64,000 nucleotides of DNA, taken from IMG/VR virus record IMGVR_UViG_3300027996_002186, positions 186,001 to 250,000 of that record; one strand, 5' to 3'. A program made the position numbers and the translations under genes. The notes beneath the pieces were generated by a model. It made no database searches. It was not told where the DNA came from and saw nothing but the letters and a program-made list of their open reading frames with translations. Positions 1 through 48,107 of the stretch are shown one piece after another; position 1 is the stretch's first letter; the number at the start of each line of letters is the position of its first letter.

Positions 1-245
1 TTGAAAAATCAAAATCAGGAGAATGGAAAGAATATGAATCACCAGAAGCATTTAAAAATGAGACAGGTGCTTCTTTGGACGAAGAATATGTAGGTAGTAA
101 AAGTCAACAATTGTTGAATTTAATAACTGGTGCCGATGGTGAGTATGATGGTATTGATGATTATAGAGTAGGTTATATAGAATCAATTTATTTTGATGAT
201 GAGCCAACTGATATGTTAAAAAAATTATTAAGAAATTATGATTAA
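1..245 (+). CDS. hypothetical protein, 5'-truncated by window edge
   Basis: Open frame 3 from base 3 to TAA 243-245 (EKSKSGEWKEY...LLRNYD*), overlapping the next ATG. Confidence 0.7.
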   Translation, partial: EKSKSGEWKEYESPEAFKNETGASLDEEYVGSKSQQLLNLITGADGEYDGIDDYRVGYIESIYFDDEPTDMLKKLLRNYD

Positions 246-729
246 AAAGTGGAAACAATTCGTTAATGAATCAAATAGTGATTATAGTTTATTGAACTTC
301 TTTCAGGAGATGCAATCATTTCCAGCGGCGGGAGTAGATAAACAAGACATTGAAGAAGCGTCTAAACCTGTGAATAAAATGAAGACAGTTAGTAATGTTC
401 CTGAACTTCAAGGATTGTTAGATGATTGGAGTGGTGGGAAGTATGATGAAGATCCTGGATATTTAGTAAATGAATTAAGAGGTTTACTTGAGAGTAATAA
501 AATTGATGAGAATCTATCAGCAGAATTAGATAAAGAAACAATATTACATATTTTAAATTTGAAAGTTAAAGAAGGTCTAAATAAGAAAGTAAATTATGAA
601 TTATGGGATTTTGATGATGCCTACAAAGGTGTCTCTGATGGTGGTACAGTAAATGCTTATAAATCTGGTAGAAAAAAAGCTTTTAAGGAAGTTTTGGATA
701 TGATAAATGATTTTGATAAAAATAAATAA
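238..729 (+). CDS. hypothetical protein with CTS-like N-terminal leader (putative head-packaged protein)
   Basis: 163 aa ORF starting MIKKWKQFVNES. Confidence 0.75.
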   Translation: MIKKWKQFVNESNSDYSLLNFFQEMQSFPAAGVDKQDIEEASKPVNKMKTVSNVPELQGLLDDWSGGKYDEDPGYLVNELRGLLESNKIDENLSAELDKETILHILNLKVKEGLNKKVNYELWDFDDAYKGVSDGGTVNAYKSGRKKAFKEVLDMINDFDKNK

Positions 730-735
730 AGAAAG

Positions 736-1176
736 ATGATTAAAAAGTGGAGTCAATTTAACGAAAGTAAAGCAGAGAAACCAGGTGAAAATATACCGGG
801 TTCTGTTAAGGTAAATTTAACTGATGAGGATGTTAACGCATTTACAGATAACACATCTTTACAAAAATTAATTTCTGATGATAAAGTTGCATTACTTGAT
901 GGAGAAGCTTGGTATTGGGAAGATGATATGACTACTAAAGGTATTTTAGATCAATATTTAGAAATACCTGGTACTGTTGAAGAAGAACCAACTGGAGATT
1001 TAGTTAGTGAGAATTTTCAATGGTCGGATGATGAAATCAATAAATTAGAAATAGATATTCATGATGAGATTGCTAAAGGTATGACTAAGGAAGAATTTTT
1101 AGAATATTCTTCTAGTTACTCTTTTGGTATGGGTGAGGTTTTTGAAGTATTGAAAAAGTGGGCTTTTAGACCTTAA
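736..1176 (+). CDS. acidic hypothetical protein with CTS-like leader
   Basis: 146 aa ORF starting MIKKWSQFNES. Confidence 0.75.
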   Translation: MIKKWSQFNESKAEKPGENIPGSVKVNLTDEDVNAFTDNTSLQKLISDDKVALLDGEAWYWEDDMTTKGILDQYLEIPGTVEEEPTGDLVSENFQWSDDEINKLEIDIHDEIAKGMTKEEFLEYSSSYSFGMGEVFEVLKKWAFRP

Positions 1177-3060
1177 TTATCTTTTAAGATTTTCCCAAAG
1201 TATTTGATAGATATCATCTATTTTATTATACTTTATTCTAATTAAATTAATATAATTATCTTCACAGTAATTCTTCTTAATTTTATCTATTTCCCTTATC
1301 CTATTTAGTGTTTTTAATCCCCCAAACTCATCTATTGGTTCAAAATGATGTCTACCATCAAATTCTATTATTGTTCTTGTTTTTGGTAGATAATAATTAA
1401 ATATTAAACCATCTATGTTGTGGTTTTTATAATACCTTATGTCATTTTCATCTAAGAAATGTGATATATAATTCATATACTTAAATTCATCACATTTTTT
1501 ACAACCTATTCCGTAATTTAAGTGTGTATATGCCCTTTGTATAAAGGAACCGTGTATAGGACACAAAACTTCTATATGTGAGTTTATATTTTTATATTCA
1601 TTTACATTTATAATGTATTTATATTTAAAATTGTGTGTTATTTGACACTTGGATATTAGTTCATTTATTTTATTTTCTCTTGTTTTCTTATAAACTTTAA
1701 CCTTTGGTTGCTTCGCCTTTTTTGCTTCTGTGAGAGAGTAATATTCTGCTAATATATTTTCTATGTTTTTATAATCGGTGAATTTTATCCTCAATAAATC
1801 TATTTTATTATCGGTACAAAACTTATTTTTAATATTATCTCTTATTTGTGTTTCCTTTAACTTTTTGATACCACCCCATGTTTCTATTATTTCCGAGTGT
1901 TGTGGTCCATCATATTCTATACAAGAATTGAATTTGGGTATATAAAAATCAAATTTTAAGTTTTTTTTATATTCACACCCCTCAAATTCCTTTTGTGATA
2001 TAAAATTCACTTTATATTTATTTAATAATTCCCTTATTTTAATTTCACCTTTACTTTCCTTGCATATAGGACATCCTGAACCATTAATATGTTCAATTGG
2101 TCGTTTTGAGAATTGTCCGTGGAGTGGACATATTATTTCTATTTTTGATTTTTTATTTTTGAAAATTGATTTTGAATAATCATACTTATTATTAAATGTT
2201 TTATTTGATATTTTTATAAATTCATGTATATTCATTGATAATTTTTTTAATCTAGAGCATTCCGGACATCCTTTTTTGTTATGTATGTGATGTGTTGCAT
2301 TTTTTTCGAAAATGCCGTGAGATGGACATATTATTTTAACTTTATCTCTTAGTGTTTTATAGTTTACTAATTCGTAATTGTATTTATAATTATGTATTTT
2401 ATTACAACTTTCTATAAATTCATCCTTTGATATTTTTATTCTTTCTTCTGTGCATAATGTACAACATTGGCCTTTGGTTATGTGTCTTTCTGGATTTAAT
2501 ATGAACTCCCCATGTTTTTTACAGATTGCTTTTATCGGTGATTTATAATCAAATATTCCCGGCTTTGTGTATTGGTAAAGACCATGGTATATATTGTTAG
2601 ATCTTTCTATAAATTCCACAAATGTAATTTTTTGACTTTCAGATTTATTAATTATCGAGCACTTCGGGCATTTACTACCCATCATATGGTTTGATGGTGT
2701 TGGGAAAAATGATCCGTGTTCTTTACAAACAACTTCCACTTTTGTTTTGCTATCGATTAAATTGACTTTTGTGTAATCATATATGTTTCCGTGTTTCCTG
2801 TTACTTCTTTCTATAAATTCACTCTTAGTTATTTTATTCTTTGATGTTATTTTATTTGTGTAGCATTCTTTACACCCAGTTGATCCATTTAGGTGTGTGT
2901 AAACTTTTTGTTTAAATCTATTATCGTGATCCCTGCATTTTATTTCTATATAATCGTGTGATTTAACATCACCATTTATATAATATTTATAATTATAATC
3001 TTTGTGTATATTTTTAACTCTCTCTAAGAATTTTTCTTTTTCCATGTTATTATATATCAT
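1177..3060 (-). CDS. free-standing homing-endonuclease-like protein: six zinc-ribbon (DUF723-like) repeats and two PD-(D/E)XK/Vsr-like nuclease domains
   Basis: Repeats C-x2-HG-x-F...H...G-C-x2-C; nuclease motifs FDFYIP..CIEYDGPQH and FNYYLP..IIEFDGRHH; real start may be ATG 3045 (MEKEK). Confidence 0.8.
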   Translation of the reverse strand: MIYNNMEKEKFLERVKNIHKDYNYKYYINGDVKSHDYIEIKCRDHDNRFKQKVYTHLNGSTGCKECYTNKITSKNKITKSEFIERSNRKHGNIYDYTKVNLIDSKTKVEVVCKEHGSFFPTPSNHMMGSKCPKCSIINKSESQKITFVEFIERSNNIYHGLYQYTKPGIFDYKSPIKAICKKHGEFILNPERHITKGQCCTLCTEERIKISKDEFIESCNKIHNYKYNYELVNYKTLRDKVKIICPSHGIFEKNATHHIHNKKGCPECSRLKKLSMNIHEFIKISNKTFNNKYDYSKSIFKNKKSKIEIICPLHGQFSKRPIEHINGSGCPICKESKGEIKIRELLNKYKVNFISQKEFEGCEYKKNLKFDFYIPKFNSCIEYDGPQHSEIIETWGGIKKLKETQIRDNIKNKFCTDNKIDLLRIKFTDYKNIENILAEYYSLTEAKKAKQPKVKVYKKTRENKINELISKCQITHNFKYKYIINVNEYKNINSHIEVLCPIHGSFIQRAYTHLNYGIGCKKCDEFKYMNYISHFLDENDIRYYKNHNIDGLIFNYYLPKTRTIIEFDGRHHFEPIDEFGGLKTLNRIREIDKIKKNYCEDNYINLIRIKYNKIDDIYQILWENLKR

Positions 3061-3194: not shown

Positions 3195-4421
3195 ATGGCA
3201 AAAAAGAAAGAAGTTAAAAAATTTGAATTTAGTAAAGTAGGGGCTATATTAGATAACATCGCTAAAACTGTGCCTATTCAAATAGAAACTGAGGTAAAGG
3301 AAAGGGAGTTTATAACTACTGGTGTTTATGTGTTAGATGCTGCTTTATCTGGGAAATTATTAGAAGGTGGTATTTCTACAAATCGAATTACAGCCTTTGC
3401 TGGTGAGTCAGGGTCAGGAAAATCATTTTTGGCATATTCTGTTTGTAGAAATGCTCAAAAGAAAGGATATTCGGTTATTTATATTGATACAGAACAAGCT
3501 GTTGATTTGGAAGATATGCCTAAGTTTGGTGTTGATAGTTCTCCAGAAAAATTTAGACTTATAAGATCTAATAAAGTTGAGGATGTTAATATTCTCCTTA
3601 CCCAATTAGTTGATGAGTTGAAAGAGCAAAAGATTAATGGGTTTGAAATACCAAAGTTGTTAATAGTTTTGGATTCACTTGGTCAGATGGCATCTAATAA
3701 AGAAAAAGAAGATTTGTTGAAAGGTAATATTAAACAAGATATGACAAAGGCGAAGGCCATGGGTTCTATGTTCCGAAGTATAAACACTGATTTGGGGTAT
3801 TTGAATATTCCATTTTTAGTATGTAACCATACTTACCTAACCATGGATCTTTTTCCACGAGCAGTGCTAAAGGGTGGTAATGGATTATTATATTCTGCTT
3901 CTGTTATTGGATTTATGAGTAAGTCTAAACTAAAAACGGGTGATGAAGATGATATGGATTTAGGATCATCTGGGATTAGTGTATTGTTCAAAACACAAAA
4001 GAATAGATTAGCTAAACCTAAGAAAATCAGATTTGATATCTCATTTGCTAATGGTATGAATCCTTTTACAGGGTTAGATGCTTTTTGTAGACCAGAATAT
4101 TTTGAACAAATAGGTATTGCTAAAGGTAAAATGGAAGTGAATAAAGAAACTGGTGAAATGACATTTAAACCAGGTGGTAATAGATGGTATGTTAACCATT
4201 TGAGTAAATCAGTTAGTAAGAAACAATTATTTAGACCAGATGTATTTACAAAAGAGGTGTTAGAAGCTATGAACCCTATTGTAAATGATTATTTTAGATT
4301 CAAATCAATTGATGAAATAGAAGAAGTTGAAAAACAATTCAATGAAGTTATTGAGGATGACGCGTATGATGATACAAACGGTTTCACAGATGCGTCAGAC
4401 GCAGAAGATATTTTCAAGTAA
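3195..4421 (+). CDS. uvsX: RecA/UvsX-family recombinase
   Basis: Walker A GESGSGKS, YIDTE, Walker B LIVLDSLG, DMTKAK, NHTY, GGNG motifs of T4 UvsX/RecA. Confidence 0.92.
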   Translation: MAKKKEVKKFEFSKVGAILDNIAKTVPIQIETEVKEREFITTGVYVLDAALSGKLLEGGISTNRITAFAGESGSGKSFLAYSVCRNAQKKGYSVIYIDTEQAVDLEDMPKFGVDSSPEKFRLIRSNKVEDVNILLTQLVDELKEQKINGFEIPKLLIVLDSLGQMASNKEKEDLLKGNIKQDMTKAKAMGSMFRSINTDLGYLNIPFLVCNHTYLTMDLFPRAVLKGGNGLLYSASVIGFMSKSKLKTGDEDDMDLGSSGISVLFKTQKNRLAKPKKIRFDISFANGMNPFTGLDAFCRPEYFEQIGIAKGKMEVNKETGEMTFKPGGNRWYVNHLSKSVSKKQLFRPDVFTKEVLEAMNPIVNDYFRFKSIDEIEEVEKQFNEVIEDDAYDDTNGFTDASDAEDIFK

Positions 4422-5451: not shown

Positions 5452-5904
5452 TTAAGCGAGAATCAATTTAAGGAAGTTATCTCTCTTTTCAGACTTTGAT
5501 AGTTTCTTAGCACAAGATGGTCCAATTCCAGTTAAGATACTAGATGGTACTGTTAGTGGTCTATTACATTTACCACATCTTCCTTCATGCCAAACTTCTA
5601 TTTTTTCAGATAGATTCTTTGATTTTAATTTTTTCACAACATATTCGAAAACTTTAACAGATTGTGAATCTTTTGTTATTAAAGATTTCTTACCGTGTCT
5701 GTAATTACCTTCTACTGCCGTTCCGATGTAAGAATAATTATCTGGTCCATTTAGAAGACTTACGAAAAACAGGTTTGAATCTTTAGCTTGTTTCACTTTG
5801 AAAGTGAATCTGTTATTAGTTTCTACATTTAAGAATGTAGTCGTTGATTTACCCGAGAAGATAAATTTAAGAGCGTCTGTGTTATTTAATTTGTGTCCTT
5901 TCAT
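5452..5904 (-). CDS. DUF6011-like zinc-binding protein
   Basis: HEGRCGKCNRPLT..SI..GIGPSCA. Confidence 0.7.
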   Translation of the reverse strand: MKGHKLNNTDALKFIFSGKSTTTFLNVETNNRFTFKVKQAKDSNLFFVSLLNGPDNYSYIGTAVEGNYRHGKKSLITKDSQSVKVFEYVVKKLKSKNLSEKIEVWHEGRCGKCNRPLTVPSSILTGIGPSCAKKLSKSEKRDNFLKLILA

Positions 5905-5940: not shown

Positions 5941-5962
5941 AAATATTACTCAATGACCAAAT

Positions 5963-5971
5963 TAATATATA
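5963..5971 (+). promoter_or_regulatory. late-promoter box, 4 nt before ATG
   Basis: TAATATATA-ccgt-ATG. Confidence 0.65.
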
Positions 5972-5975
5972 CCGT

Positions 5976-6392
5976 ATGTTGAAAAAGTATAACGAGTTTC
6001 TAAAAGAAAGTGTTTATGGTGATAAAGGTATGACTTATAATGATATAAGTGATATTATGTTATACATAACTGATGAGTTTCCGGAGTTAGGATTTTCAGT
6101 AGAGAATCCATTACAATCAGGCATCATTAAAAATGATGATAAATCATTTATTATACAACTTTTTGATAAAACCATAGATTTTCCAAATGATATGCCAACA
6201 TTATATCATATAGAGCCAAAGATACACGATTTAATATATGATGTTCATTCACAACTAAGTGGATTCGGGTTAAAGGTATTTTATAGTGATTTTGGATCTA
6301 CTGATGCTTATTATGAGTTGGTTATCACTGAAATTGGTCATAAACCACAGTTTATACCGGAGAGATATGATAATGATGGTAACCCAAACTAA
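5976..6392 (+). CDS. hypothetical protein with CTS-like leader
   Basis: 138 aa starting MLKKYNEFLKES. Confidence 0.75.
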   Translation: MLKKYNEFLKESVYGDKGMTYNDISDIMLYITDEFPELGFSVENPLQSGIIKNDDKSFIIQLFDKTIDFPNDMPTLYHIEPKIHDLIYDVHSQLSGFGLKVFYSDFGSTDAYYELVITEIGHKPQFIPERYDNDGNPN

Positions 6393-9103: not shown

Positions 9104-10618
9104 TTATTTTTGTTTTCTATCGTGGTGACTATGACCCTCGTTTATTCTTTCTATTTCTCTAAGATAAATTTCCTTTCCTTCTCCTAAGAATTCACTTAGC
9201 TCTTTTACTTTAGAAAAGTCTCCATCACCTTTCTTTATAGCCGCATCAAGAGCATCATCAATTAAATCTTGAATCTCTTTTTTACTTAATTGAGAGTAAT
9301 CTGATTCTCTTTCAATTGTTTTTTGTTTCATCTCATCCTCAAATGAAATATCTTTTTCTTTACTAGGTTCAATTGTATCTCCATCTTCTTCTGGTTCGTT
9401 ATAATCAGAATTAGGTAAAGCTTCGCCTAATTCATACTCATCTATTGATTTGATTATTTCTTCTACCATCTCATCAACCTTTGTTCTAGCTTCTGGGGTA
9501 CTTAAAAGAATTTTCTTAACCAATGGTAAGAACTCATCTACTGGTAAAGCGTGTAACACACCATAGAAGTGTTCTCTTATATTTGGATACTTATCAACAT
9601 CCGGAGCTTCATTAACAAAATCTCTTATATCTGATGCTAATTCTGGTCCATATCTGAACTCTTCTGCTTCATCATCCATTGTAGATGTATTTGACATAAC
9701 TAATCCAGCAGTTCTTTTATCTTCTGGTATACCAGCCGCTGCTATTAATTCATAAATACCTTTAACAGTTTCATGTAATAACATTGGGAAATCTACACCT
9801 CTTGCTTTTATAATTGGGTTACCACTTGATAACAATTCTTGTATATCCTCATCTTCGTTATCTATATCAGCGTCATCTTCTTCAAGATTCTTTAATATTT
9901 TCTTTGATAAATCTTCTTCTTCTTTTGCTTCTGGCCATTTTACTGAACATGCTCCTGCCGCTCCTTCTGGTGCTTGTTCCATCATATCACCTTTAACATC
10001 AACTGGTATTAACCAATCCATTTTATCAGCTAATTCTGTTAATCTCATCCATAGTGTGTGAGCTTCTTCACCTGGTCCTTGACCAAGAATAGCTTGTAAT
10101 TCAGTTTTAACTTCTGGCATTGCTAAAATTCTTTTGGTGTTTTTAGCTTCACCTTGTGTAATATTGTTTATAACCTTTCTTTTATCAACCTCTTTTTTAA
10201 TTTCGGGATCTTCTAATAATTGCATAGATGGTGGTTCACAATCTTCACACTCTTCATCCATAAAAGCCTTAACATCACCTGGCCTAACAATCTTAATATC
10301 TAAATCTACATTATCTAATATAGACGCATATTCTTGCATTATTATTCTTTCTGCTAATTCTTCTAAAGCATCTTCATTACCTCTAACAAACCTCATAGAT
10401 TGTCCCATGACTTCCATCATCTCTCTACCTACTTGCATTGTTTGTCTTGGAGGTCCAAATCTAGGGTTTTCCTCATTGGGTACACCTATTCTTTGACGAG
10501 CTCTACGCTCAACATCACTTAAATATTTCTTTTCATCTTTATCAGCCCCTTCTCCAGGTATACCTGAGTTACCTTTAAGAGAAACTTCTTCATTCATAAA
10601 GTCGTTAAAATTCTTCAT
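9104..10618 (-). CDS. acidic hypothetical protein with CTS-like leader and degenerate zincin-like LLHETVKG motif
   Basis: 504 aa starting MKNFNDFMNEE. Confidence 0.7.
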   Translation of the reverse strand: MKNFNDFMNEEVSLKGNSGIPGEGADKDEKKYLSDVERRARQRIGVPNEENPRFGPPRQTMQVGREMMEVMGQSMRFVRGNEDALEELAERIIMQEYASILDNVDLDIKIVRPGDVKAFMDEECEDCEPPSMQLLEDPEIKKEVDKRKVINNITQGEAKNTKRILAMPEVKTELQAILGQGPGEEAHTLWMRLTELADKMDWLIPVDVKGDMMEQAPEGAAGACSVKWPEAKEEEDLSKKILKNLEEDDADIDNEDEDIQELLSSGNPIIKARGVDFPMLLHETVKGIYELIAAAGIPEDKRTAGLVMSNTSTMDDEAEEFRYGPELASDIRDFVNEAPDVDKYPNIREHFYGVLHALPVDEFLPLVKKILLSTPEARTKVDEMVEEIIKSIDEYELGEALPNSDYNEPEEDGDTIEPSKEKDISFEDEMKQKTIERESDYSQLSKKEIQDLIDDALDAAIKKGDGDFSKVKELSEFLGEGKEIYLREIERINEGHSHHDRKQK

Positions 10619-10887
10619 TATTTATTGACATATTTTTTTATGTCTTCACCCTTATCATTAAGGAGACTCACGAATTTATTAACAACGTCTTCAACACTAG
10701 ATGTTGGAAGTTCCATTTTAGGATTAGGATTAACCGATGGTTTATCTCTCCTTATTGGTGATGGTCTACTAGGTCTTGTTCCTGGTTTAACATCTGGAGT
10801 TGTTGTTGGTGCTGGTTTAGTTTCCACTTCCTGTCCACCCATTACGAACTCTTCATTAAATTTTTCGAATTTTTTTAAAAATCTCAT
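10618..10887 (-). CDS. small Pro/Thr-rich protein with CTS-like leader
   Basis: 89 aa MRFLKKFEKFNEE...PAPTTTPDVKPGTRPSRPSP; late box at 10912-10920 (minus strand). Confidence 0.7.
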   Translation of the reverse strand: MRFLKKFEKFNEEFVMGGQEVETKPAPTTTPDVKPGTRPSRPSPIRRDKPSVNPNPKMELPTSSVEDVVNKFVSLLNDKGEDIKKYVNK

Positions 10888-11988: not shown

Positions 11989-12498
11989 TAAGAAAGTTTA
12001 ATGAAGTTGTGAACAAGGCACTTATCGTAAAGATAAAAATGGTTTGATTTTACTAAGGATTATAAAAAAAAAAAAGGTTATGGCAATAGAAATACAAGGG
12101 TTTGAAACAAGATTTGGTGATAGTTACGAAAAAGCATATGCTCGTATAGTTTCTTTAAGTATAAATTATACTAGGGAAATTGCAGAGGTTAGTATTGGGA
12201 TTTATAGAAGTGAGCTTGATAGGGAAATAGGAAAAGACCCCGTATCACTAGAAAAAAAATTAATTGAAGGTTCTCATTTTATAGAGTTTTTCAAAGAGCT
12301 TCAAGTAGATAAAATTGATGCCAGTATAAATCCAATAGCAGATATTTATAATGACCTAACTATAAGAGAGGGTAAATATAAAGGTGGAAAGAAGTTATAT
12401 GATGAGATGATAAATGATGAAGGTGAGGTAAAAGAAATTAGCAAAGATGAAAAACTAAAGGAAATAAAATGAACCATTTAAGAAAGTTTAATGAAGTT
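11989..12498 (+). repeat. 20-bp exact direct repeat TAAGAAAGTTTAATGAAGTT at 11989-12008 and 12479-12498
   Basis: Read directly; both copies encode the leader peptide RKFNEV and flank one gene. Confidence 0.85.
12080..12472 (+). CDS. hypothetical protein
   Basis: ORF-track ORF 12044-12472; ATG 12080 after an A-tract is the more plausible start. Confidence 0.7.
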   Translation: MAIEIQGFETRFGDSYEKAYARIVSLSINYTREIAEVSIGIYRSELDREIGKDPVSLEKKLIEGSHFIEFFKELQVDKIDASINPIADIYNDLTIREGKYKGGKKLYDEMINDEGEVKEISKDEKLKEIK

Positions 12499-12739
12499 TG
12501 GGAGCCTACACTTCCAAATAAATATCCAAATTCTAGTGGTGAATTACTTAGAAATGAATTCGGTGAATTCAGTAAATCTAATGAGTGAGGTTAGAGATAT
12601 AATAAATAAAGTTGCTAAATTGGAAAAAACAGAAAGCGTAACAAGATATTTAGATGAATTACATAAATATTATAAAACGTTAGATAATGTTCCAGCAAAC
12701 TTAATGAATGGTAATATTAAATACAACTCAATTGATTAA
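12469..12739 (+). pseudogene. probably frameshifted CTS-leader gene (or two tiny ORFs)
   Basis: ATG 12469 gives MNHLRKFNEVWEP...SKSNE* (stop 12588); a coding-like frame (SEVRDIINKVAK...) continues in +1 to 12739. Confidence 0.5.
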
Positions 12740-12741: not shown

Positions 12742-12771
12742 AAAAAACCCAACTTAATCAGTTGGGTTTTT
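12742..12771. terminator. bidirectional intrinsic terminator
   Basis: AAAAAACCCAAC-TTAATCA-GTTGGGTTTTT. Confidence 0.75.
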
Positions 12772-12957
12772 AATTTTAAATATATTTTCTATTTTAGATT
12801 TCCTTATTAAATTTATAGTTCTTATAAAATATCTAGACTTGATAGATAACCTTGGTGTAAAGTTAGAATTAGAAATAGATTGTACTGTTTCTATTGGTAT
12901 ATAAGGCACCCAAACTAAACCTGATTGTAGTGAATTACTTGTTTTCTTACCCGTCAT
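12754..12957 (-). CDS. small protein containing a C-terminal-region fragment of gp23-type major capsid protein
   Basis: GLVWVPYIPIETVQSISNSNFTPRLSIKSRY aligns ungapped with T4 gp23 GIYYAPYVALTPLRGSDPKNFQPVMGFKTRY (recalled sequence). Confidence 0.65.
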   Translation of the reverse strand: MTGKKTSNSLQSGLVWVPYIPIETVQSISNSNFTPRLSIKSRYFIRTINLIRKSKIENIFKIKNPTD

Positions 12958-21711: not shown

Positions 21712-22442
21712 GAATAAAGAAGTGGGATAATTTCCAAATTATAAACGAATCTTTTTCTAGATCTAATGAGTATTCTGATTTTTTATCAGATAACGCATTA
21801 TCTGATGATTTTTTCACTGATAGTCTTAGAGAGGTTATTGATATGAGTAATTGTAGTGTGAGTGTTCATAAAATGATAAGTGATCCAAAGGGGTTATTCG
21901 TAAAAGAATTTACAGATGGTGTAGAGTATAAGATAAAGTATATGATACTTATTGTTTTTAAACAAAAGCCTGATCACACATTCGATGAGTTTTCTGGTAT
22001 TGTTGATGATTTATCCGTAGTTAGAATGTCTATTCAGGAGATGATTGATAGGTCTGGTGAATTAGAATTAAACCATAATAAAGTTCTAGTTGAGCCTATT
22101 TCAAGTAAAAACAGTTCTGGTGATGCTTCTCATACAACATTTTATATACACTTCCTTGGTGAGGATATTAGTGATAAGCTTAAAGATTATTATCAGAGAT
22201 GGGACACATCTATTGGAGATGAATACCGAAAAATGATGAAAAAGTTAAGAGATTTTTATAAAACACATGATATAGATTTTGATGATGTTTATGATACCAT
22301 GGACGATGATGATAACATAAATATTGGTGTTTTCCCACCAAATGAAGAATTACATCACGTAGCTACTTATCATAAGAATACTAATAAGTATAATATTTAT
22401 CACGATGAGTTAAAAGATTCCTTAAAATCATTTGAAGGATGA
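21708..22442 (+). CDS. hypothetical protein with CTS-like leader
   Basis: 244 aa MRIKKWDNFQIINES. Confidence 0.75.
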   Translation: MRIKKWDNFQIINESFSRSNEYSDFLSDNALSDDFFTDSLREVIDMSNCSVSVHKMISDPKGLFVKEFTDGVEYKIKYMILIVFKQKPDHTFDEFSGIVDDLSVVRMSIQEMIDRSGELELNHNKVLVEPISSKNSSGDASHTTFYIHFLGEDISDKLKDYYQRWDTSIGDEYRKMMKKLRDFYKTHDIDFDDVYDTMDDDDNINIGVFPPNEELHHVATYHKNTNKYNIYHDELKDSLKSFEG

Positions 22443-22516
22443 AATATTTAAAGAAATATAACGAATCATTACGTCAACGTTTTTCAAAAACAATACAATT
22501 AATTTTCATTAAATAA
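22439..22516 (+). pseudogene. 25-codon stub: CTS leader with no body
   Basis: MKYLKKYNESLRQRFSKTIQLIFIK*; first 30 nt nearly identical to the start of 47814. Confidence 0.5.
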
Positions 22517-22536
22517 AGTAGTATAGTGTAAATTAT

Positions 22537-25302: not shown

Positions 25303-25782
25303 ATGAATAAATTTAGTGAAATGATAAACGAAAGTAATTCATCCAAAATTAAATTGGGTATCGATGTTCATGGTGTTATAGATGCCATGCCGGAGTTTTT
25401 TGCATTCATGACAGATGCTTTTGTAAAAAATGGAGGTGAAGTGCATATAATTACTGGTGGATCTTGGACTGATGAAATGAAATCAGAAATCGATTCTTAT
25501 GGTATTAAATACACACACGTTTTTTCTGTTTATGATTTTCTTGTTAAAGGTGATTCTTTAGTTACTGGTGAGATTGAATTTCCTGATGGAACTATACAAA
25601 GTAAGTTTCGTAATGAAGATTGGGATGTGGTTAAAGCTAATTATTGTAGAGATAATGGTATAACTTTACACTTGGATGATACTATATCTTATAATGAATT
25701 CTTTACCACACCATTTGCTAGGTTCTGGAGTCATTCTGGTCAAAAGAAGAAGCCACATAAAGATGTTAGACATATGAACTAA
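25303..25782 (+). CDS. HAD-like protein with CTS-like leader
   Basis: MNKFSEMINES; LGIDVHGVID, IITGG, K, HLDD. Confidence 0.7.
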   Translation: MNKFSEMINESNSSKIKLGIDVHGVIDAMPEFFAFMTDAFVKNGGEVHIITGGSWTDEMKSEIDSYGIKYTHVFSVYDFLVKGDSLVTGEIEFPDGTIQSKFRNEDWDVVKANYCRDNGITLHLDDTISYNEFFTTPFARFWSHSGQKKKPHKDVRHMN

Positions 25783-28530: not shown

Positions 28531-29100
28531 ATGGAAAAGTTTTCAAAGTTAAAGTCGAAAGATGAATTCGGGGGTAAAAAGGATAAAATTATCTATAATG
28601 ATGATTACTTCAAAATTATTGAATATGAGGATTGGCATATTATTCAAGAAAGAGATGCTGTTGTTTGTATTCCTTATTTAATTGAAAGTAATCAATTTAT
28701 TATTCGTTATGAATATATACCACCTTTTAAATATGTTGATGGTCAAGAGTATCATATAACTGTTATAAGTGGTGGTATTGAAGACGGTGAGACTACTGAA
28801 AGAGCTTTAGTAAGAGAATTAGAAGAAGAAGCTGGTATTGTTTTAAGAGAAGATTATCAATTAGAAGAAATGAAGCCTTTATTTATTAGTAAAGCACATA
28901 CTAATAAATACAGACCATTTATAATTCCATTAAATGAGGGAGATTATCATGAAGTTATCGCTAAGGGTGATGGTTCGAAAGCTGAGGAACTCAGTAAGTC
29001 TGTTAAAGTTGATGCTAAATATATTGATTCGATGAATACTTCTGATTTAATAACTGATTATATGTTACTTAAATTGAAAGAATATCTTAGTGGTCTTTAA
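28531..29100 (+). CDS. Nudix hydrolase
   Basis: Nudix box GGIEDGETTERALVRELEEEAG; late box 28501-28509. Confidence 0.9.
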   Translation: MEKFSKLKSKDEFGGKKDKIIYNDDYFKIIEYEDWHIIQERDAVVCIPYLIESNQFIIRYEYIPPFKYVDGQEYHITVISGGIEDGETTERALVRELEEEAGIVLREDYQLEEMKPLFISKAHTNKYRPFIIPLNEGDYHEVIAKGDGSKAEELSKSVKVDAKYIDSMNTSDLITDYMLLKLKEYLSGL

Positions 29101-30442
29101 GATAATTATCTAATAGATGTTTTATATCTGAATTTATACCTTTACTATCCGCACTTCCATAATCTGGTATTCTAGGATTTAAAGTTTCATTAAACCATTG
29201 TTGTCCACACCATTCATCCCATAAATTTCTTATTGATGATTCTCTGAATAAATCATCTGAATCAAAGTCATCCATCCATTTAGAATCAAATTCAACTTCA
29301 TAATAAGTTATACTTTGTGTGTAACCTGATGAATTATGTTTTGATTTAACCCAAGTATCTATATCAACTTTTTGATAGTCAAATTCTTCATCAACCTTAT
29401 AATCAAAGGAACTTAATATACTGTTATATGTCTCATCAACGTGTGCTCCCATTTCCCAATCGGCTGCTATCTGTTTAGCTTCTTGTGATATTTCTATATC
29501 CTTTGATAATTCATCTATCGACCTATAAAATCTTTCCTTTAGTAAAAATTCAATAAGCTCATCTTCTGATGATATATTTTCAAATCCATTTGACATATGT
29601 GGCCAATCAAAATTATCTAATACTTCTTGAAATCCACCATATTCTTTAATAATTGACTTAACCATTAAAACTTCATTTTCTTTATCTAATGTATATTGGA
29701 AAAATGATTGTGTGTCTGGTATATAATAATGTGACTCATAATGATCCCACATATTCTCAGTACCACCAACTAGTGTATCTTTATAATCATCATTTCTATT
29801 TAATAGACAATCAGCCATGTCTTCCAAATCAACGTGTATATAAACACCACCTGATTTATCTTCTTTGTCATAAGCAAGTCCATAATAATCAGCAACTTGT
29901 TTCTGTGTTAATTCAACAGTATTTTTTTGTTTAACAAACAAAGCTATGTATTCTTTAGCTTCTAATTGTTCTGAATGTTTAAAAAATATTTCTCCTTTTT
30001 GGTTTCTCGATTCATCCTTTCCTATCCATAAACCACCTTTTAATTGAATGTTGTTTATGTCTAATCGACCATCCTCATCATGTATTGTTATTTCCCCATC
30101 AACCTTCTCCTTAATTATATCATGTGCGAAAATAACAGAATCAGTTACATCAACACTAGAAGTATCTCTACCGGTTTCTATTAATATCCAATAAGCTGGT
30201 CTAATATCATCACCAGGTATTACTTTTTCTGTGAAAACTTGACTAGTGGTTGTTTTGTTAACTTTATAGTTATATGATTCTTCTTCATTAACAAACCCAA
30301 ATGTTACTGTTGTTAAATAATTCTCATCATCTAAATCTATTAGAAATTCTCGTATATCATCTTCGTCTAACTTCCAGAACTTACCATCGTCTATATCTTC
30401 TTTTATAGACTCTCTTATGAACTTCCAATACTTTTTAATCAT
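29087..30442 (-). CDS. acidic hypothetical protein with CTS-like leader
   Basis: 451 aa MIKKYWKFIRES; TTATATATA-cact-ATG. Confidence 0.75.
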   Translation of the reverse strand: MIKKYWKFIRESIKEDIDDGKFWKLDEDDIREFLIDLDDENYLTTVTFGFVNEEESYNYKVNKTTTSQVFTEKVIPGDDIRPAYWILIETGRDTSSVDVTDSVIFAHDIIKEKVDGEITIHDEDGRLDINNIQLKGGLWIGKDESRNQKGEIFFKHSEQLEAKEYIALFVKQKNTVELTQKQVADYYGLAYDKEDKSGGVYIHVDLEDMADCLLNRNDDYKDTLVGGTENMWDHYESHYYIPDTQSFFQYTLDKENEVLMVKSIIKEYGGFQEVLDNFDWPHMSNGFENISSEDELIEFLLKERFYRSIDELSKDIEISQEAKQIAADWEMGAHVDETYNSILSSFDYKVDEEFDYQKVDIDTWVKSKHNSSGYTQSITYYEVEFDSKWMDDFDSDDLFRESSIRNLWDEWCGQQWFNETLNPRIPDYGSADSKGINSDIKHLLDNYLKDH

Positions 30443-30453
30443 AGTGTATATAT

Positions 30454-41871: not shown

Positions 41872-41899
41872 TTTGATTTGATAAATTAATATATAGATT

Positions 41900-42274
41900 A
41901 TGATTAAAAAATATTTACAGTATATAAAAGAAGCTGATGAAATTCAATCAGAACCAGATTCATCTAAATTTGAAGATGTTAAAGATGAGGTTAAATCAAT
42001 GATTGAGAAAACTATCGAACAAAGTGGAGGTGAATTTTCTTCTTTTGTTGATTCCTTTATCAAAAATCCAGAAGATGTTAAAATAGAAGGATTTATAAAT
42101 GATTCTGATGTTTATGAATTTTATTTGAAATGGAGAAATGATATTGATGAAATCTTAAATGATATTAAATTCTTTGGAGAAACTCCTACTGAAATAAATG
42201 CATTTGGGTTATATGAATATGTTATTAAGGGAACCGAGAATTCTATGAATGAAATTGTGAAAATGTTATCATAA
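41900..42274 (+). CDS. hypothetical protein with CTS-like leader
   Basis: MIKKYLQYIKEA; TAATATATA-gatt-ATG. Confidence 0.75.
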   Translation: MIKKYLQYIKEADEIQSEPDSSKFEDVKDEVKSMIEKTIEQSGGEFSSFVDSFIKNPEDVKIEGFINDSDVYEFYLKWRNDIDEILNDIKFFGETPTEINAFGLYEYVIKGTENSMNEIVKMLS

Positions 42275-45660: not shown

Positions 45661-46821
45661 ATGGGTGTTTGTGGACAATCATTATTTGGTAGTGGTAGTA
45701 ACTATATAAAAGTATCAAATGGATCATTCGTTGCTATTGAGGGATCAAATACAGCCGAGAATTTAATTCTATCTAATTTGAGAATGCCTTATAAGCAATT
45801 ATTAAAAGGTAGAGTTTTATTAAAAATTGGTCAAAAAGATTACTTATTAAACCATTTAGGTTTAGGAGATAACGCAACATTTTTAGCTATTAAAGTAACC
45901 TATGATCCTAAATCTGTAATTGAAGAAGATAATTATGTTGAGTGGTCTTTTTATGATGATGTTTCTAGAGTTAATTCAATGGCTCAGTTATTAGTATTAA
46001 CTGGTAATTCAAGTAATAGGATACCACAATTATTCTTAACAAATCCAAATAGTAAATACCCAGTAACACTTGATGTTATGGTTGCTGTTATTGATGATAA
46101 TTCATTCTTTGATTATAGCCCTGTTGTTTATTTTACACCATTAGTAACATTAGAAAATGCTGTTTATTTAGGACCTTATAATACATCACTTGGTACCAAC
46201 TTTGGTGCAACTATATCAAGTATTAATGATTTTATTGGATATGATATTGATAGTTTAAGAACTGAAATTGTAGACCATGTTGTTGAGTCAAATGGTTTGA
46301 TATTGAGTACCACTAGTAGTAATTATTTGTTGTATGATTATGATACTAATCCAATTAGTTCATTTACATTATCTGGTACATATTCTATGAAATTTGATAT
46401 AACAGATTCTTTAAATAACTCAATTAATGTTGCTGATAATGTTGTTATAGAATACAACACAATATACACACCTGTTGTTTATTTCACACCCGATGTTTAC
46501 TTACCTGGATCAACAGCTTCACCATTTAATACTTTACAAGGTGCTACATTTGGGGCTACAGTTTCATTAACTATGTCTAGTTATGGTGGTACGGTTAGTT
46601 CATTGGATATGGCTGGTGTTTTAGTTGACCATGTTGAAGAAGCTAATGGTGTTACTTTCTCAGCTACGGGTAGTAACTACATATTATATGATTATTCAAG
46701 TTTGGTTATAAGTGGTATAACATCATCAGGAACATATTCATTAGGATTTAATATAACAGATTCTTTTGGAACACTTGATCCAAATAACATCGTAAATATA
46801 TCATTCACAGGATTATTATGA
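45661..46821 (+). CDS. putative structural protein with two tandem ~120-aa Ig-like repeats
   Basis: PVVYFTP...FGAT...VDHV.E.NG...NY.LYDY...SGTYS..F.ITDS occurs twice; late box 45631-45639. Confidence 0.7.
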   Translation: MGVCGQSLFGSGSNYIKVSNGSFVAIEGSNTAENLILSNLRMPYKQLLKGRVLLKIGQKDYLLNHLGLGDNATFLAIKVTYDPKSVIEEDNYVEWSFYDDVSRVNSMAQLLVLTGNSSNRIPQLFLTNPNSKYPVTLDVMVAVIDDNSFFDYSPVVYFTPLVTLENAVYLGPYNTSLGTNFGATISSINDFIGYDIDSLRTEIVDHVVESNGLILSTTSSNYLLYDYDTNPISSFTLSGTYSMKFDITDSLNNSINVADNVVIEYNTIYTPVVYFTPDVYLPGSTASPFNTLQGATFGATVSLTMSSYGGTVSSLDMAGVLVDHVEEANGVTFSATGSNYILYDYSSLVISGITSSGTYSLGFNITDSFGTLDPNNIVNISFTGLL

Positions 46822-47810
46822 TAATTAAAAAGTACATACAATTTATAAAAGAAAGCTCAGAGGATTTTAAATCACTAGGTGAGTGGATTGAATCTATATC
46901 TGATGATGAGTATGTTATGAACATCGTAAATAGATATTTAGGTGATATTGGTTCAGATATAGAATTATCAAATGCTATTAATTTATTAGATGAGGTAGAA
47001 CAATCTGATATAAAATCACAAGTACAAGATTATTTACAAAATGGTCTTGTTGAGATAGAACCACAAGTTTTAACATCTACTGATATTGAAGATTTGAGTG
47101 AGAGTTTGGAATTAATGCCTGCTCCGGTTATACAACAAGAAATAAGTGTTGCTGGTAAAGGTGTATTTTCATCTTTCCTTAAATCATTAACTGCTCTCGG
47201 TAGAAAAGAATCTAGTCCTGATTATGAGAATTGTCCAAAAGATTTCTTGATTTATTACAATTATGAAAATTTAAATACTAATGATGTTAAAATAATATTT
47301 AGTCGATTCAAATCACTTTTAAGGTATTCTGATAAGATTGATTATAGTAAGAATGAAATAAATCTTTACTTCGGTATCAAATGTGATGGTCAATTTGAAT
47401 ATGGTATATCTTATGATAATTTACTTCCAATTGGTCAATTTAAGTTATCAATCTCAAGTATTAAGTGGTTAGTTCAACAACAATCAAAATCAGCACAATC
47501 CATTAAAAAGGAATTAGTTAATCTAACATACAATGATATATTATTACTTGGTAAGATTAAAATGGATATGGTAGATTTTAACCCTGGTTATCATGAAAAG
47601 AGATCTTATCCTACTATAAATGATAGAGTTATATCTTTTGGGTATTATGGTGTCGGTAAATGGGATAATGGTAAATTAGATGAAGGTGAGTATATGAATA
47701 TTAAAAATAATTTTACTACTTGGGTAATTTCTAAGAAATGGGGTGGTAAAGTGTTGGTGAGTGTTAAACCACAATCATTTTGGTTATACATACATATAAA
47801 ATTGAAATAA
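46818..47810 (+). CDS. hypothetical protein with CTS-like leader
   Basis: 330 aa MIIKKYIQFIKES. Confidence 0.75.
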   Translation: MIIKKYIQFIKESSEDFKSLGEWIESISDDEYVMNIVNRYLGDIGSDIELSNAINLLDEVEQSDIKSQVQDYLQNGLVEIEPQVLTSTDIEDLSESLELMPAPVIQQEISVAGKGVFSSFLKSLTALGRKESSPDYENCPKDFLIYYNYENLNTNDVKIIFSRFKSLLRYSDKIDYSKNEINLYFGIKCDGQFEYGISYDNLLPIGQFKLSISSIKWLVQQQSKSAQSIKKELVNLTYNDILLLGKIKMDMVDFNPGYHEKRSYPTINDRVISFGYYGVGKWDNGKLDEGEYMNIKNNFTTWVISKKWGGKVLVSVKPQSFWLYIHIKLK

Positions 47811-47813
47811 GAT

Positions 47814-48107
47814 ATGAAATATTTAAGAAAATATAACGAGTCAAACGAACAAGAGCAAGATTTAGATTTTGTTTTAGCTAAGATAAAAGAAGAGTTTACT
47901 ATTGATAAGGTTAAAGAATCTTATGAAAAAGAAATGCTTGAATGGGCAGATGATTACACTACAAGTGGTAATGGTGAGGCACAAGACATTATATTAGAAC
48001 AGATGATTGGGTGGTTCGAATCAAACCATTCTGAGCTTACAGATGAAGTATCTAAAGAAGTTTATAATAAATTACAAGAAGAATACGAATTCCTAAACAT
48101 TGGTTAA
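47814..48107 (+). CDS. acidic hypothetical protein with CTS-like leader
   Basis: 97 aa MKYLRKYNES. Confidence 0.75.
   Translation: MKYLRKYNESNEQEQDLDFVLAKIKEEFTIDKVKESYEKEMLEWADDYTTSGNGEAQDIILEQMIGWFESNHSELTDEVSKEVYNKLQEEYEFLNIG

What the first reader, a model, noticed from the sequence alone, without database searches (positions are those of the whole stretch)
238..48107. About 20 proteins share a T4-CTS-like N-terminal leader, predicting a large head-packaged cargo set that includes enzymes
Seen: M-x(1-3)-K-K-[FWY]-x-x-F-x-[NK]-E-S-type starts at 238, 736, 5976, 9097, 10618, 10887, 11000, 11430, 12469, 13296, 13334, 20875, 21708, 22439, 25303, 30442, 32984, 41900, 46818 and 47814. Most lie directly behind, or in an operon behind, the late box, and the protein bodies are unrelated. 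Established: T4 internal proteins carry a ~10-aa capsid targeting sequence (MKTYQEFIAE type) removed by the prohead protease after (I/L)-x-E. Inference: a SAM methyltransferase, a ferritin-like protein, a HAD and an ankyrin protein are packaged and injected with the DNA.
Basis: partly seen in the sequence, partly recalled or inferred. Interest (0 to 1): 0.7.

Follow-up and report, generated by a model that had tools for sequence, protein, structure and literature searches.

The report
Capsid-targeting-like leader on many megaphage proteins
About one gene in nine of this 483-kb uncultured "megaphage" starts with the same 11-13-residue peptide, which closely resembles the phage T4 tag that loads proteins into the capsid and is then cut off, so these giant phages may ship dozens of different proteins, some of them enzymes, into the host with their DNA; this rests on sequence analysis only.

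Summary
The window lies in a 483,262-bp IMG/VR phage of the clade holding the largest known phages (462-735 kb). A leader M-[IL]-K-K-[YWF]-x-x-F-[ILV]-x-E-S, with variants MK[YH]LKK[FY]NE[SE] and MKYIKxYKIFES, heads 67 of 621 called genes at >=8 bits. The same threshold gives 0 of 299 in an equally AT-rich T4-like control phage and 1 of 2,332 internal Met positions. The SAM methyltransferase is unsupported; the DUF5856, "HAD" and ankyrin proteins score weakly or moderately. Selection acts on the peptide, the protein bodies are unrelated, and the leader is conserved in orthologues and absent from cellular genomes.

The T4-like reading is well supported indirectly. The phage has a gp23-type capsid protein and a gp21-type prohead protease fused to a scaffold. 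That scaffold carries 11 tandem copies of YSEYIAE|N, the same pattern as the leader and as T4's YQEFIAE|A. A leader HMM from the 462-kb relative ranks T4 IPIII and IPII first and second. Packaging, cleavage and injection remain untested. I rate it a new variant of a known kind.

The parts
1..245 (+). 3' part of a leader gene whose start (MKYLRKFNEELES) lies 162 bases upstream of the window (genome 185838)
   Evidence: 16.1 bits with the second leader HMM
238..729 (+). Leader protein, 163 aa, MIKKWKQFVNE|S; no Pfam family
   Evidence: 27.1 and 24.5 bits; Pfam none
736..1176 (+). Leader protein, 146 aa, MIKKWSQFNE|S
   Evidence: 24.3 and 22.0 bits; the orthologue in the 634-kb phage keeps the leader; many IMG/VR orthologues
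5976..6392 (+). Leader protein, 138 aa, MLKKYNEFLKE|S; TTAATATATA box ends 4 nt before the ATG
   Evidence: 25.3 and 26.2 bits
7169..9097 (-). 642-aa protein with a moderate leader, MKLHKYNQFLDQ; marginal ankyrin match
   Evidence: 9.2 bits; Ank_2 25.5 bits, below the 27.3 cut-off
9104..10618 (-). 504-aa protein with a borderline leader, MKNFNDFMNE|E, conserved in the 634-kb orthologue
   Evidence: 5.3-6.6 bits; orthologue starts MKNFKDFMNEE
10618..10887 (-). Leader protein, 89 aa, MRFLKKFEKFNE|E
   Evidence: 19.2 bits; 634-kb orthologue 19.2 bits
12469..12588 (+). Orphan leader: a 39-codon ORF, MNHLRKFNEVWE..., with no protein body
   Evidence: 9.3 and 13.4 bits; the ORF ends after 39 codons
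12754..12957 (-). 67-aa ORF resembling capsid protein residues 511-556 (fragment-like paralogue)
   Evidence: PF07068 33 bits; BLAST 5e-6
22439..22516 (+). Orphan leader: a 25-codon ORF, MKYLKKYNESLRQ..., upstream of a Metallophos gene; this stretch is missing from the 634-kb relative
   Evidence: 12.8 and 15.2 bits; alignment to the relative begins only at window position 22529
25303..25782 (+).
   Evidence: 6.0-6.4 bits; no Pfam family at E<0.01
29087..30442 (-). Leader protein, 451 aa, MIKKYWKFIRE|S; box ends 4 nt before the ATG
   Evidence: 24.5 bits; orthologues at 42-69% identity keep the leader; no Pfam or Atlas lead
41900..42274 (+). Leader protein, 124 aa, MIKKYLQYIKE|A, followed by an acidic linker
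   Evidence: 23.4 bits; orthologues
46818..47810 (+). Leader protein, 330 aa, MIIKKYIQFIKE|S
   Evidence: 24.5 bits; six IMG/VR orthologues keep the leader
47814..48107 (+). Leader protein of the second variant, 97 aa, MKYLRKYNE|S
   Evidence: 11.7 and 16.9 bits
48140..48631 (+). 163-aa paralogue of the capsid protein's N-terminal propeptide and N-arm. It keeps the WMSQYVEMHSINE|N site, so it probably uses the capsid protein's own route into the prohead
   Evidence: BLAST to capsid protein residues 8-112, E=2e-13

Best explanation
The leader is a short N-terminal propeptide of the T4 capsid-targeting-sequence (CTS) type.

It reads as an amphipathic helix: hydrophobic residue, K-K, aromatic, x-x, F, I/L/V, x, E, then S/N/A/E. 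This copies one unit of the phage's own scaffold repeat (NIAYSEYIAE|NLDK) and the end of the major capsid protein's propeptide (EYAEFHSINE|N).

I propose that it brings the attached protein into the scaffold core of the assembling prohead. There the gp21-type protease, which is fused to the scaffold, would cut after the conserved Glu, as it cuts scaffold and capsid protein. The mature protein would stay in the head and leave with the DNA.

Shown here: the motif, its enrichment and conservation, selection at the peptide level, the presence of a T4-type capsid protein and protease, the shared hydrophobic-x-E pattern, and the statistical likeness to the T4 IPII/IPIII CTS.

Inferred: binding to the scaffold, cleavage, retention in the head and injection.
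For: 1. Enrichment and specificity.
- 67 of 621 gene starts score >=8 bits. The controls give 0 of 299 in PTm1 (same GC) and 1 of 2,332 internal Met positions.
- A strict DNA pattern gives 10 hits in this genome, 5, 4, 1 and 6 in four relatives of 634-735 kb, and 0 for the reversed pattern.
- The related pattern finds 21 IMG/VR loci, all relatives of this clade, against 1 hit in 596 Gb of cellular genomes.

2. Selection on the peptide.
- Ser uses both TCN and AGY codons, and Lys uses AAA and AAG about equally.
- In 32 orthologue pairs the leader is 79% identical against 73.5% for the body, with equal synonymous divergence.

3. Unrelated bodies. In the enzymes the leader is an extension ahead of the catalytic domain.

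4. T4-type head machinery.
- PF07068 capsid protein, 81 bits.
- A profile of the clade's protease domains hits T4 gp21 (PDB 5jbl) at E=6.7e-8. The clade's invariant His72 and Ser127 align to the two mutated catalytic positions of that entry.

5. Shared cleavage-type motif.
- Capsid protein: conserved ...INE|N at residue 44, placed like T4's LTE65|A.
- Protease-scaffold junction: VLNE|S, aligned to T4 ITE|S.
- Scaffold: 11-14 tandem Y-S-E-Y-I-A-E|N repeats. The scaffold is the top protein for the regex [FYW]..[FYW][ILVMF].E, with 11 of the 58 internal hits.

6. The 84-aa protein at genome 41158 aligns MRYLRTYKKFTEN|AYVAAST with capsid protein WMSEYAEFHSINEN|AYANASN.

7. An HMM built only from the 462-kb relative's leaders (consensus MKYIKEYEEFLNES) scores T4 IPIII at 14.9 bits and IPII at 13.9. 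These are ranks 1 and 2 of 69, and the next best score is 4.9.

8. The T4 CTS and the 10-20-residue propeptides of IPs, gp24 and Alt are established (PMC5694885, PMC9958956).

9. Leader genes are enriched for the box that also precedes the head genes: 51% against 28%, p=2e-4.
Against: - There are no virion, proteomic or transcript data, and the phage is uncultured.
- 11-14% of all genes is far more than any known packaged set. T4 has fewer than ten such proteins.
- Leader proteins are acidic (median pI 4.86 against 5.40), unlike the basic T4 internal proteins (basicity from my own knowledge).
- Some leader proteins have T4 counterparts that work in the cytoplasm (my own knowledge): the RNA ligase, a CCA-adding-type enzyme, and the only PF00959 lysozyme in the genome, which could be the endolysin.
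- This genome's own leader HMM scores the T4 CTS at only 2-4 bits. The link to T4 runs through the 462-kb relative.
- The hydrophobic-x-E pattern carries little information.
- That leader and scaffold repeat occur together is a single clade-level event.
- About half of the leader genes have no late box within 60 nt.
Confidence: 0.6

Rival explanations
1. The leader is a cleavage or recognition tag for the prohead protease, or for another phage factor, but not a packaging signal. It could be a timing switch that activates or removes proteins late in infection, or a tag for transient core components that are degraded and never injected.
For: It shares the hydrophobic-x-E pattern with scaffold repeats, which in T4 are degraded to peptides (PMC9958956). 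Some tagged enzymes look cytoplasmic. The proteins are acidic, like the T4 core proteins gp67 and gp68 (the acidic gp67 sequence is).
Against: In T4 the protease becomes active only inside the completed prohead (PMC9958956), so cleavage implies being inside. About 70 unrelated folded bodies, including 400-670-aa enzymes, are unlikely to be disposable scaffold.
Confidence: 0.15
2. The leader serves another purpose of the peptide that has nothing to do with the head: a clade-specific N-terminal helix for oligomerisation, for membrane or compartment localisation, for chaperone or degradation control, or for recognition by a translational regulator.
For: No direct evidence ties the tagged proteins to the virion. 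The set is very large and spread over the whole genome. The fold-together test of protease and leader gave no answer.
Against: This reading does not explain the invariant Glu followed by a small or polar residue. It does not explain the identity of pattern with the scaffold repeat and the capsid propeptide end, or the exact swap seen in the 84-aa protein. It does not explain the match of the 462-kb leaders to the T4 CTS. The peptide is not hydrophobic enough for a Sec, Tat or lipoprotein signal, and it is absent from cellular genomes.
Confidence: 0.15
3. The conservation is at the nucleic-acid level. The start region of nearly leaderless late mRNAs (box ending 4 nt before the ATG, A-rich codons) is constrained for transcription or translation initiation, or serves as a recombination site for cassette exchange. 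The peptide would be a by-product.
For: 34-48% of leader genes have the box at -18 to -9, against 12% of other genes. Lys-Lys is A-rich. Orphan leaders at 12469 and 22439, and a 31/33-nt match between leader-coding stretches of different loci, suggest that recombination at leaders does occur.
Against: Synonymous sites vary freely: both Ser codon families are used, AAA and AAG are about equal, and Leu uses TTA, TTG and CTA. The aromatic position changes the middle codon base (TAT, TGG, TTT). Synonymous divergence in leaders equals that of the bodies. Half of the leader genes lack the box. The most highly expressed late genes (capsid protein, portal candidate) lack the leader.
Confidence: 0.05
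4. It is a chance or compositional artefact of an AT-rich genome, where Lys, Asn, Ile, Phe, Tyr and Glu are common.
For: GC is 29.6%. MKK-type starts are common in AT-rich phages.
Against: PTm1, with the same GC, gives 0 of 299 at >=8 bits. Internal Met positions of the same genome give 1 of 2,332. The reversed DNA pattern gives 0 hits in eight genomes.
Confidence: 0.01

Closest known systems
Phage T4 capsid targeting sequence (CTS) of internal proteins IPII and IPIII (MKTYQEFIAE|A), and the 6-20-residue N-terminal propeptides of IPI, gp24 and Alt removed by gp21
   Same: It is N-terminal and about 10-13 residues long. The pattern is aromatic-x-E/Q-F-I/L-x-E followed by Ala or Ser. It sits on otherwise unrelated proteins. 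The phage has a gp23-type capsid protein and a gp21-type protease. The 462-kb relative's leader HMM scores IPIII and IPII at 14.9 and 13.9 bits, top two of 69. T4 sequences come from NC_000866.
   Different: There are 67-85 carriers per genome instead of a handful. The preceding residues are Lys-Lys rather than Lys-Thr, and there are three sub-variants. The cargo is acidic and includes enzymes. The scaffold is fused to the protease and carries 11-14 tandem copies of the same motif. Targeting and cleavage are untested here.
Polymorphic internal-protein loci of T-even phages: diverse anti-restriction proteins sharing only the CTS (Virol J 2010, PMC3012670)
   Same: One conserved address peptide sits on a diverse, fast-turning-over set of proteins. 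Orphan leaders at 12469 and 22439 hint at cassette turnover.
   Different: Here the genes are dispersed over the whole 483-kb genome rather than held in a few loci. No anti-restriction function has been shown.
Head 'ejection' and inner-body proteins of phiKZ-like giant phages (phiKZ, SPN3US), processed by the S80 protease at [S/A/G]-x-E
   Same: Dozens of head-internal proteins are cut after Glu by a gp21-related protease and are partly injected (PMC5694885).
   Different: Those propeptides are mostly long (over 100 residues) and share no common leader. It is a different phage lineage and a different protease subfamily.
Phage P1 DarB N-terminal 30-residue packaging signal
   Same: An N-terminal peptide is sufficient to send a protein to the capsid (PMC9024508).
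   Different: There is no sequence likeness. Only one or a few proteins carry it. P1 is not a T4-type system.

Membership tests
T4-type capsid targeting sequence / prohead-protease propeptide | Short N-terminal peptide (about 6-20 residues) at the very start of the protein | tested here: met
   The motif starts at the first ATG. 19 of 24 core matches lie within the first 7 residues, and the conserved Glu sits at residue 10-13.
T4-type capsid targeting sequence / prohead-protease propeptide | Ends in the gp21 cleavage pattern, hydrophobic(L/I)-x-E followed by a small residue | tested here: met
   [ILVF]-x-E-[SNAE] is seen in the leader alignments. The same pattern occurs in the capsid protein (INE|N), the protease junction (LNE|S) and the scaffold repeats (IAE|N).
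T4-type capsid targeting sequence / prohead-protease propeptide | Sequence likeness to the experimentally defined CTS of IPII and IPIII | tested here: inconclusive
   This genome's own leader HMMs give T4 IPIII only 2.4-4.8 bits. The HMM from the 462-kb relative's leaders gives 14.9 and 13.9 bits, ranks 1-2 of 69. The link is therefore transitive.
T4-type capsid targeting sequence / prohead-protease propeptide | Sufficient to bring a protein into the prohead core | not testable with these tools
   This needs a leader-reporter packaging assay. The fold-together test of protease and leader gave no answer.
T4-type capsid targeting sequence / prohead-protease propeptide | Removed by the prohead protease during maturation | not testable with these tools
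   This needs N-terminal mapping of virion proteins or an in-vitro cleavage assay.
Peptidase S77 (T4 gp21 prohead protease), for the partner enzyme at genome 135766-137907 | Homology to gp21 with the catalytic His and Ser conserved | tested here: met
   The clade profile hits PDB 5jbl_A at E=6.7e-8. His72 (GExxHP) and Ser127/128 (SSRxxG) are invariant and aligned with T4. The Pfam PF03420 match alone is weak (19.6 bits, below the cut-off).
T4 gp23-type major capsid protein, genome 137993-139723 | PF07068 match above the cut-off, plus an N-terminal propeptide with a Glu cleavage site | tested here: met
   81.5 bits. WMSEYAEFH[SQ]INE|N is conserved in five relatives. The cleavage itself is inferred from T4's E65|A66.

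The most novel reading that the evidence does not exclude
The largest known phages (462-735 kb, probably infecting Bacteroidota) load their capsids with some 60-80 different leader-tagged proteins, about a ninth of their coding repertoire. Each is addressed by a peptide that mimics one unit of the tandem-repeat scaffold and is clipped off by the scaffold-fused protease. The cargo includes RNA-repair enzymes (Rnl1-type ligase, CCA-adding-type enzyme), a 2H-phosphoesterase/exonuclease related to anti-CBASS Acb1, a DHH phosphoesterase and a lysozyme. Together these would form a pre-made takeover and counter-defence kit delivered with the DNA.
Probability: 0.35. Interest if true: 0.85.

Novelty: new variant of a known kind. 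Interest (0 to 1): 0.66.

Why it matters
If the leader works as in T4, a simple sequence rule would predict the head-internal and injected proteome of a whole clade of uncultured megaphages. That proteome cannot currently be measured. It would be about ten times larger than T4's and would contain enzymes with plausible counter-defence roles. This would help explain what part of the extra coding capacity and capsid volume of giant phages is for.

The rule also gives a list of about 70 mostly unknown proteins per genome to screen for anti-defence or host-takeover activity. The scaffold built of tandem copies of the address motif suggests a concrete, testable docking mechanism for CTS peptides. 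How CTS peptides dock is, to my knowledge, not settled even in T4.

I found no mention of this leader in the megaphage and jumbo-phage papers I searched.

Tried and rejected
- Complex prediction of the protease domain (residues 1-200) with the first 35 residues of the protein at 736-1176 gave 'no answer' (score 0.00). It is evidence neither way.
- phmmer of the full protease-scaffold against the PDB found only a designed coiled coil. The profile search was needed to reach T4 gp21.
- The protein-atlas search on the 451-aa and 330-aa leader proteins gave no usable lead.
- Pfam on about 45 leader proteins gave no family for most of them.
- I expected the leader to co-vary with the scaffold repeat across genomes. 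The strict DNA pattern suggested that the 462-kb phage lacks the leader, but the HMM showed it has its own variant. That test therefore does not discriminate.
- Depletion of Bacteroidota-type early promoters (TTATATTTG) among leader genes was 0 of 67 against 14 of 511, which is not significant.
- No PTm1 homologue of any leader protein was found, apart from one weak 43-residue match, so PTm1's virion data cannot be transferred.
- The 'cultivated megaphage' paper concerns phage G, which does not appear among this phage's relatives.
- Compositional artefact and nucleotide-level signal were considered and rejected; see the rival explanations.


Full report
**Where the window lies.** The window is bases 186,001-250,000 of a single 483,262-bp IMG/VR virus record with 29.6% GC and a CheckV completeness of 98%. 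Its capsid protein is 78% and 73% identical to those of the uncultured huge phages LR745206.1 (634 kb) and LR756502.1 (642 kb). It is 52-53% identical to those of LR756504 (636 kb) and LR756501 (735 kb), and 36% to LR756500 (462 kb). It is about 29% identical to the Lak phages and 24-28% to the cultured Bacteroidota phages PTm1, pT24, MaF61 and MA9V. Several window genes are preceded by a Bacteroidota-type promoter, CCTTATATTTG, and Shine-Dalgarno sequences are not evident by eye upstream of the starts. This fits a Bacteroidota host, but the host is not established.

**The observation.** Translating the 20 listed starts shows the motif directly.
- Genome-wide, the core regex [KR]K[FWY]..[FY].{1,2}E occurs 24 times in 149,184 residues of a greedy ORF set. 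Nineteen lie in the first 7 residues.
- A 15-position HMM built from 21 seeds, then rebuilt from 78 hits in this genome and the 634-kb relative, has the consensus M-K-M-I-K-K-Y-N-E-F-I-E-E-S.
- That HMM scores 67 of 621 gene starts at >=8 bits and 85 at >=6 bits. The 634-kb phage gives 80 of 916 at >=8 bits.
- The controls are low. PTm1, with the same GC, gives 0 of 299 at >=8 bits and 1 of 299 at >=6. Internal in-frame Met positions of this genome give 1 and 3 of 2,332.
- There are three sub-variants: M[IL]KK[YWF]xxF[ILV]xES, MK[YH]LKK[FY]NE[SE] and MKYIK[PST]YKIFES.
- A strict DNA pattern finds 10 copies here, and 5, 4, 1 and 6 in the 634-, 642-, 636- and 735-kb phages. The reversed control pattern finds none in any genome.
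- A related strict pattern finds 21 loci in IMG/VR. All have 24-34% GC, and all but one short locus encode homologues of this phage's proteins at about 47-66% identity. The same pattern finds only one hit in 596 Gb of bacterial and archaeal genomes.
- The 462-kb phage has its own version, MKYIKEYEEFLNES, on 23 of 530 genes in the 400 kb I read.

- Seven starts are strong: 238, 736, 5976, 10887-, 30442-, 41900 and 46818.
- Four are clear: 47814, 9097-, 22439 and 12469. The last two head ORFs of only 25 and 39 codons.
- Two are borderline: 25303 and 10618-.
- Two are possible at best: 11430 and 21708.
- Five are not supported: 11000, 13296-, 13334, 20875 and 32984-.

- The SAM methyltransferase at 20875 is real by Pfam, but its start, MNILNWELFLEE, scores only 3.4-4.5 bits.
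- The protein at 11430 is a DUF5856 member with 4.5-5.3 bits.
- The protein at 25303 has no Pfam match.
- The ankyrin match at 9097- is below Pfam's cut-off.

**What kind of signal it is.**
- Codons within the leader vary freely. Ser is TCA, TCT, AGT or AGC. Lys is AAA or AAG in nearly equal numbers. Leu is TTA, TTG or CTA. The aromatic position is TAT, TGG, TTT or TAC.
- In 32 orthologue pairs with the 634-kb phage, the leader is 79% identical at the protein level against 73.5% for the rest. Identical residues differ in codon equally often, 32% against 31%. Selection therefore acts on the peptide.
- 54 of 72 leader genes have reciprocal best hits in the 634-kb phage. The pattern is kept while the x positions change.
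- Orthologues at 35-70% identity in IMG/VR contigs also keep the leader.
- After removal of the first 16 residues, only one trio of leader proteins is related by BLAST.
- The major late proteins (capsid protein, portal candidate, protease-scaffold) lack the leader. It is therefore not a general feature of highly expressed genes.

**The head machinery.**
- Genome 137993-139723 encodes a PF07068 (Gp23) capsid protein, 81.5 bits.
- Directly upstream, 135766-137907 encodes a 713-aa protein whose first ~200 residues align with T4 gp21. The GExxHP His and the SSRxxG Ser are invariant.
- A profile of seven clade sequences, built without T4, hits PDB 5jbl (T4 prohead core protease) at E=6.7e-8. The clade's His and Ser align to the two positions that read Ala in that entry and His and Ser in wild-type gp21.
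- In PTm1 the homologous gene is annotated as 'prohead core scaffolding protein and protease'.

**The shared motif.** Four observations tie the leader to this machinery.
1. The capsid protein's N-terminus carries WMSEYAEFH[SQ]INE|N, near-identical in the 483-, 634- and 642-kb phages and conserved with substitutions in the 636-, 735- and 462-kb phages. The Glu is residue 44, about 41 residues before the first conserved block. T4's Glu65 lies about 33 residues before the corresponding block. The T4 sequence comes, and removal of T4's 65 N-terminal residues is documented in PMC9958956.
2. The protease domain ends in a conserved V-L-N-E|S-L-G that aligns with T4 E-I-T-E|S. Its N-terminus, PVLIVE|N, aligns with T4 PQLLIE|T.
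3. Residues ~285-440 of the same protein are 11 tandem 14-residue repeats, NIAYSEYIAENLDK. The 634-, 642- and 636-kb phages also have 11, the 735-kb phage has 14, the 462-kb phage has degenerate repeats, and PTm1 has a different repeat. Y-S-E-Y-I-A-E|N follows the same pattern as the leader Y-N-E-F-I-K-E|S and the T4 CTS Y-Q-E-F-I-A-E|A. The regex [FYW]..[FYW][ILVMF].E has 24 N-terminal and 58 internal matches in the proteome, and 11 of the internal ones are in this one protein.
4. An 84-aa protein (genome 41158-41412) aligns to the capsid protein so that its leader, MRYLRTYKKFTEN, overlays WMSEYAEFHSINEN. Its next residues, AYVAAST...VVAAQPGSL, overlay AYANASN...VVAAQPNSL (tblastn E=1.6e-4). 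The leader therefore stands exactly where the capsid propeptide ends.

**Likeness to T4.**
- The T4 N-termini were read from NC_000866: IPII and IPIII start MKTYQEFIAE|A, IPI starts MKTFKEF..., gp24 starts MAKINELLRE|S, and gp22 starts MLKEQLIAE|A.
- This genome's leader HMMs align YQEFIAE to Y-k-q-F-i-e-E but score only 2-5 bits.
- An HMM made only from the 462-kb phage's leaders scores IPIII at 14.9 bits and IPII at 13.9. These are first and second of 69 T4 ORF N-termini in a 50-kb stretch, and the next best scores 4.9.
- The literature establishes that the CTS directs IPs, and foreign proteins fused to it, into the T4 core. It also establishes that gp21 removes 10-20-residue propeptides from IPs, gp24 and Alt (PMC5694885, PMC9958956, PMC3012670).

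**Expression.**
- The box [AT]ATATATA lies 25-35 nt upstream of the portal candidate, the protease-scaffold and the capsid genes.
- It lies within 60 nt of 51% of leader genes against 28% of others (p=2e-4).
- In 34-48% of leader genes it ends only about 4 nt before the ATG, against 12% of others. That suggests nearly leaderless late mRNAs.
- That the box is a late promoter is an inference from its position before the head genes and its likeness to T4's TATAAATA (the latter from my own knowledge).

**The cargo.** Most leader proteins have no Pfam family. The convincing leaders with domains all lie outside the window:

| Genome position | Size | Pfam result |
|---|---|---|
| 358129 | 421 aa | Rnl1-type RNA ligase |
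| 398540 | 400 aa | PolyA_pol head domain, as in CCA-adding enzymes |
| 344043-345353(-) | 436 aa | 2H phosphoesterase, with a weaker Acb1 match, plus RNase_T |
| 48648-50660(-) | 670 aa | weak, below-cut-off DHH and winged-helix matches |
| 139798 | 129 aa | NFACT-R_1 protein, right after the capsid gene |
| 3483-4313 | 276 aa | the only PF00959 lysozyme in the genome |

In each case the domain starts 23-130 residues in, so the leader is an appended extension. Leader proteins are more acidic than the rest (median pI 4.86 against 5.40, p=2e-5).

**Judgement.** The best explanation is a T4-type address-and-cleavage propeptide that has expanded to 11-14% of the genes in this clade. The likely docking mechanism is mimicry of the scaffold repeat. 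I put this at about 0.6. The gap is that nothing shows the proteins are in particles or are cut. The size of the set, the acidity of the cargo and the cytoplasmic-looking enzymes are reasons for caution.

The rivals are ranked as follows:
- a protease or other tag without packaging, 0.15;
- another peptide function, 0.15;
- a nucleic-acid-level signal, 0.05;
- a compositional artefact, about 0.01.

The concept is known from T4. The scale, the clade, the repeat scaffold and the enzyme cargo are new, and they do not appear in the papers I could search.

Noticed in passing
window 48140-48631 (+), 12754-12957 (-); genome 144179-144931, 41158-41412, 435797-436351 (-), 335553-335759: Small ORFs each resemble a different part of the major capsid protein: the propeptide plus N-arm, residues 439-546, 511-556, 30-85 and 330-370. 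They may be a dispersed or fragmented capsid paralogue (a vertex-protein remnant?) or small head proteins that reuse capsid segments.
   Followed up: partly
window 12469-12588 and 22439-22516: Two good leaders head ORFs of only 39 and 25 codons. The second sits in a stretch missing from the 634-kb relative. Its coding DNA matches a leader at another locus of that relative in 31 of 33 bases. This hints at gene-cassette turnover by recombination at leaders.
   Followed up: partly
genome 135766-137907 (outside the window): The prohead protease is fused to a scaffold with 11 tandem 14-residue repeats, NIAYSEYIAENLDK, followed by a very acidic low-complexity stretch. Relatives of 634-735 kb have 11-14 repeats.
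   Followed up: yes
window, upstream of 5452-5904 (-), 22553, 27534, 27852 and 31635: A CCTTATATTTG motif matches the Bacteroidota -7 promoter type (TAnnTTTG). It probably marks early genes read by the host polymerase and points to a Bacteroidota host.
   Followed up: partly
window 5962-5971, 30447-30456 and 41886-41895; many other sites in the genome: The TTAATATATA / TTTATATATA box often ends only 4 nt before the ATG, which implies nearly leaderless mRNAs. Before the head genes the same box lies 25-35 nt upstream.
   Followed up: partly
window 33989-35830 (-): A PhoH-like ATPase carries a LAGLIDADG / Hom_end insert (residues ~290-371), which looks intein-like. The 634-kb relative matches only 41% of the protein.
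   Followed up: no
window 1177-3060 (-): A 627-aa protein combines DUF723, a treble-clef zinc finger (DUF4379), DUF2726 and DUF559 matches. It looks like a composite homing-endonuclease or Vsr-like nuclease.
   Followed up: no
window 14024-15589 (-): A 521-aa protein with a C-terminal Peptidase_S74 (intramolecular chaperone of endosialidase) domain is a likely tail fibre or spike. The neighbouring ORFs of 505 and 544 aa are probably tail proteins too.
   Followed up: no
PTm1 (AP019524.1), e.g. 139854-141695: The cultured relative PTm1 lacks the megaphage leader. It has a handful of N-termini ending I-x-E-[SN]-F (MKLFETINESF, MKELIKHIQESF, MSTSNLYNTIQENF), which may be its own short propeptides.
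   Followed up: partly
window 36154-41871 (+) and genome 147250-153117: Two very large proteins (1,905 and 1,955 aa) have an internal leader-like motif near residues 66-97 (TKKFQLFNE, YYTKYLSE). This could be an internal cleavage site of a longer propeptide.
   Followed up: no
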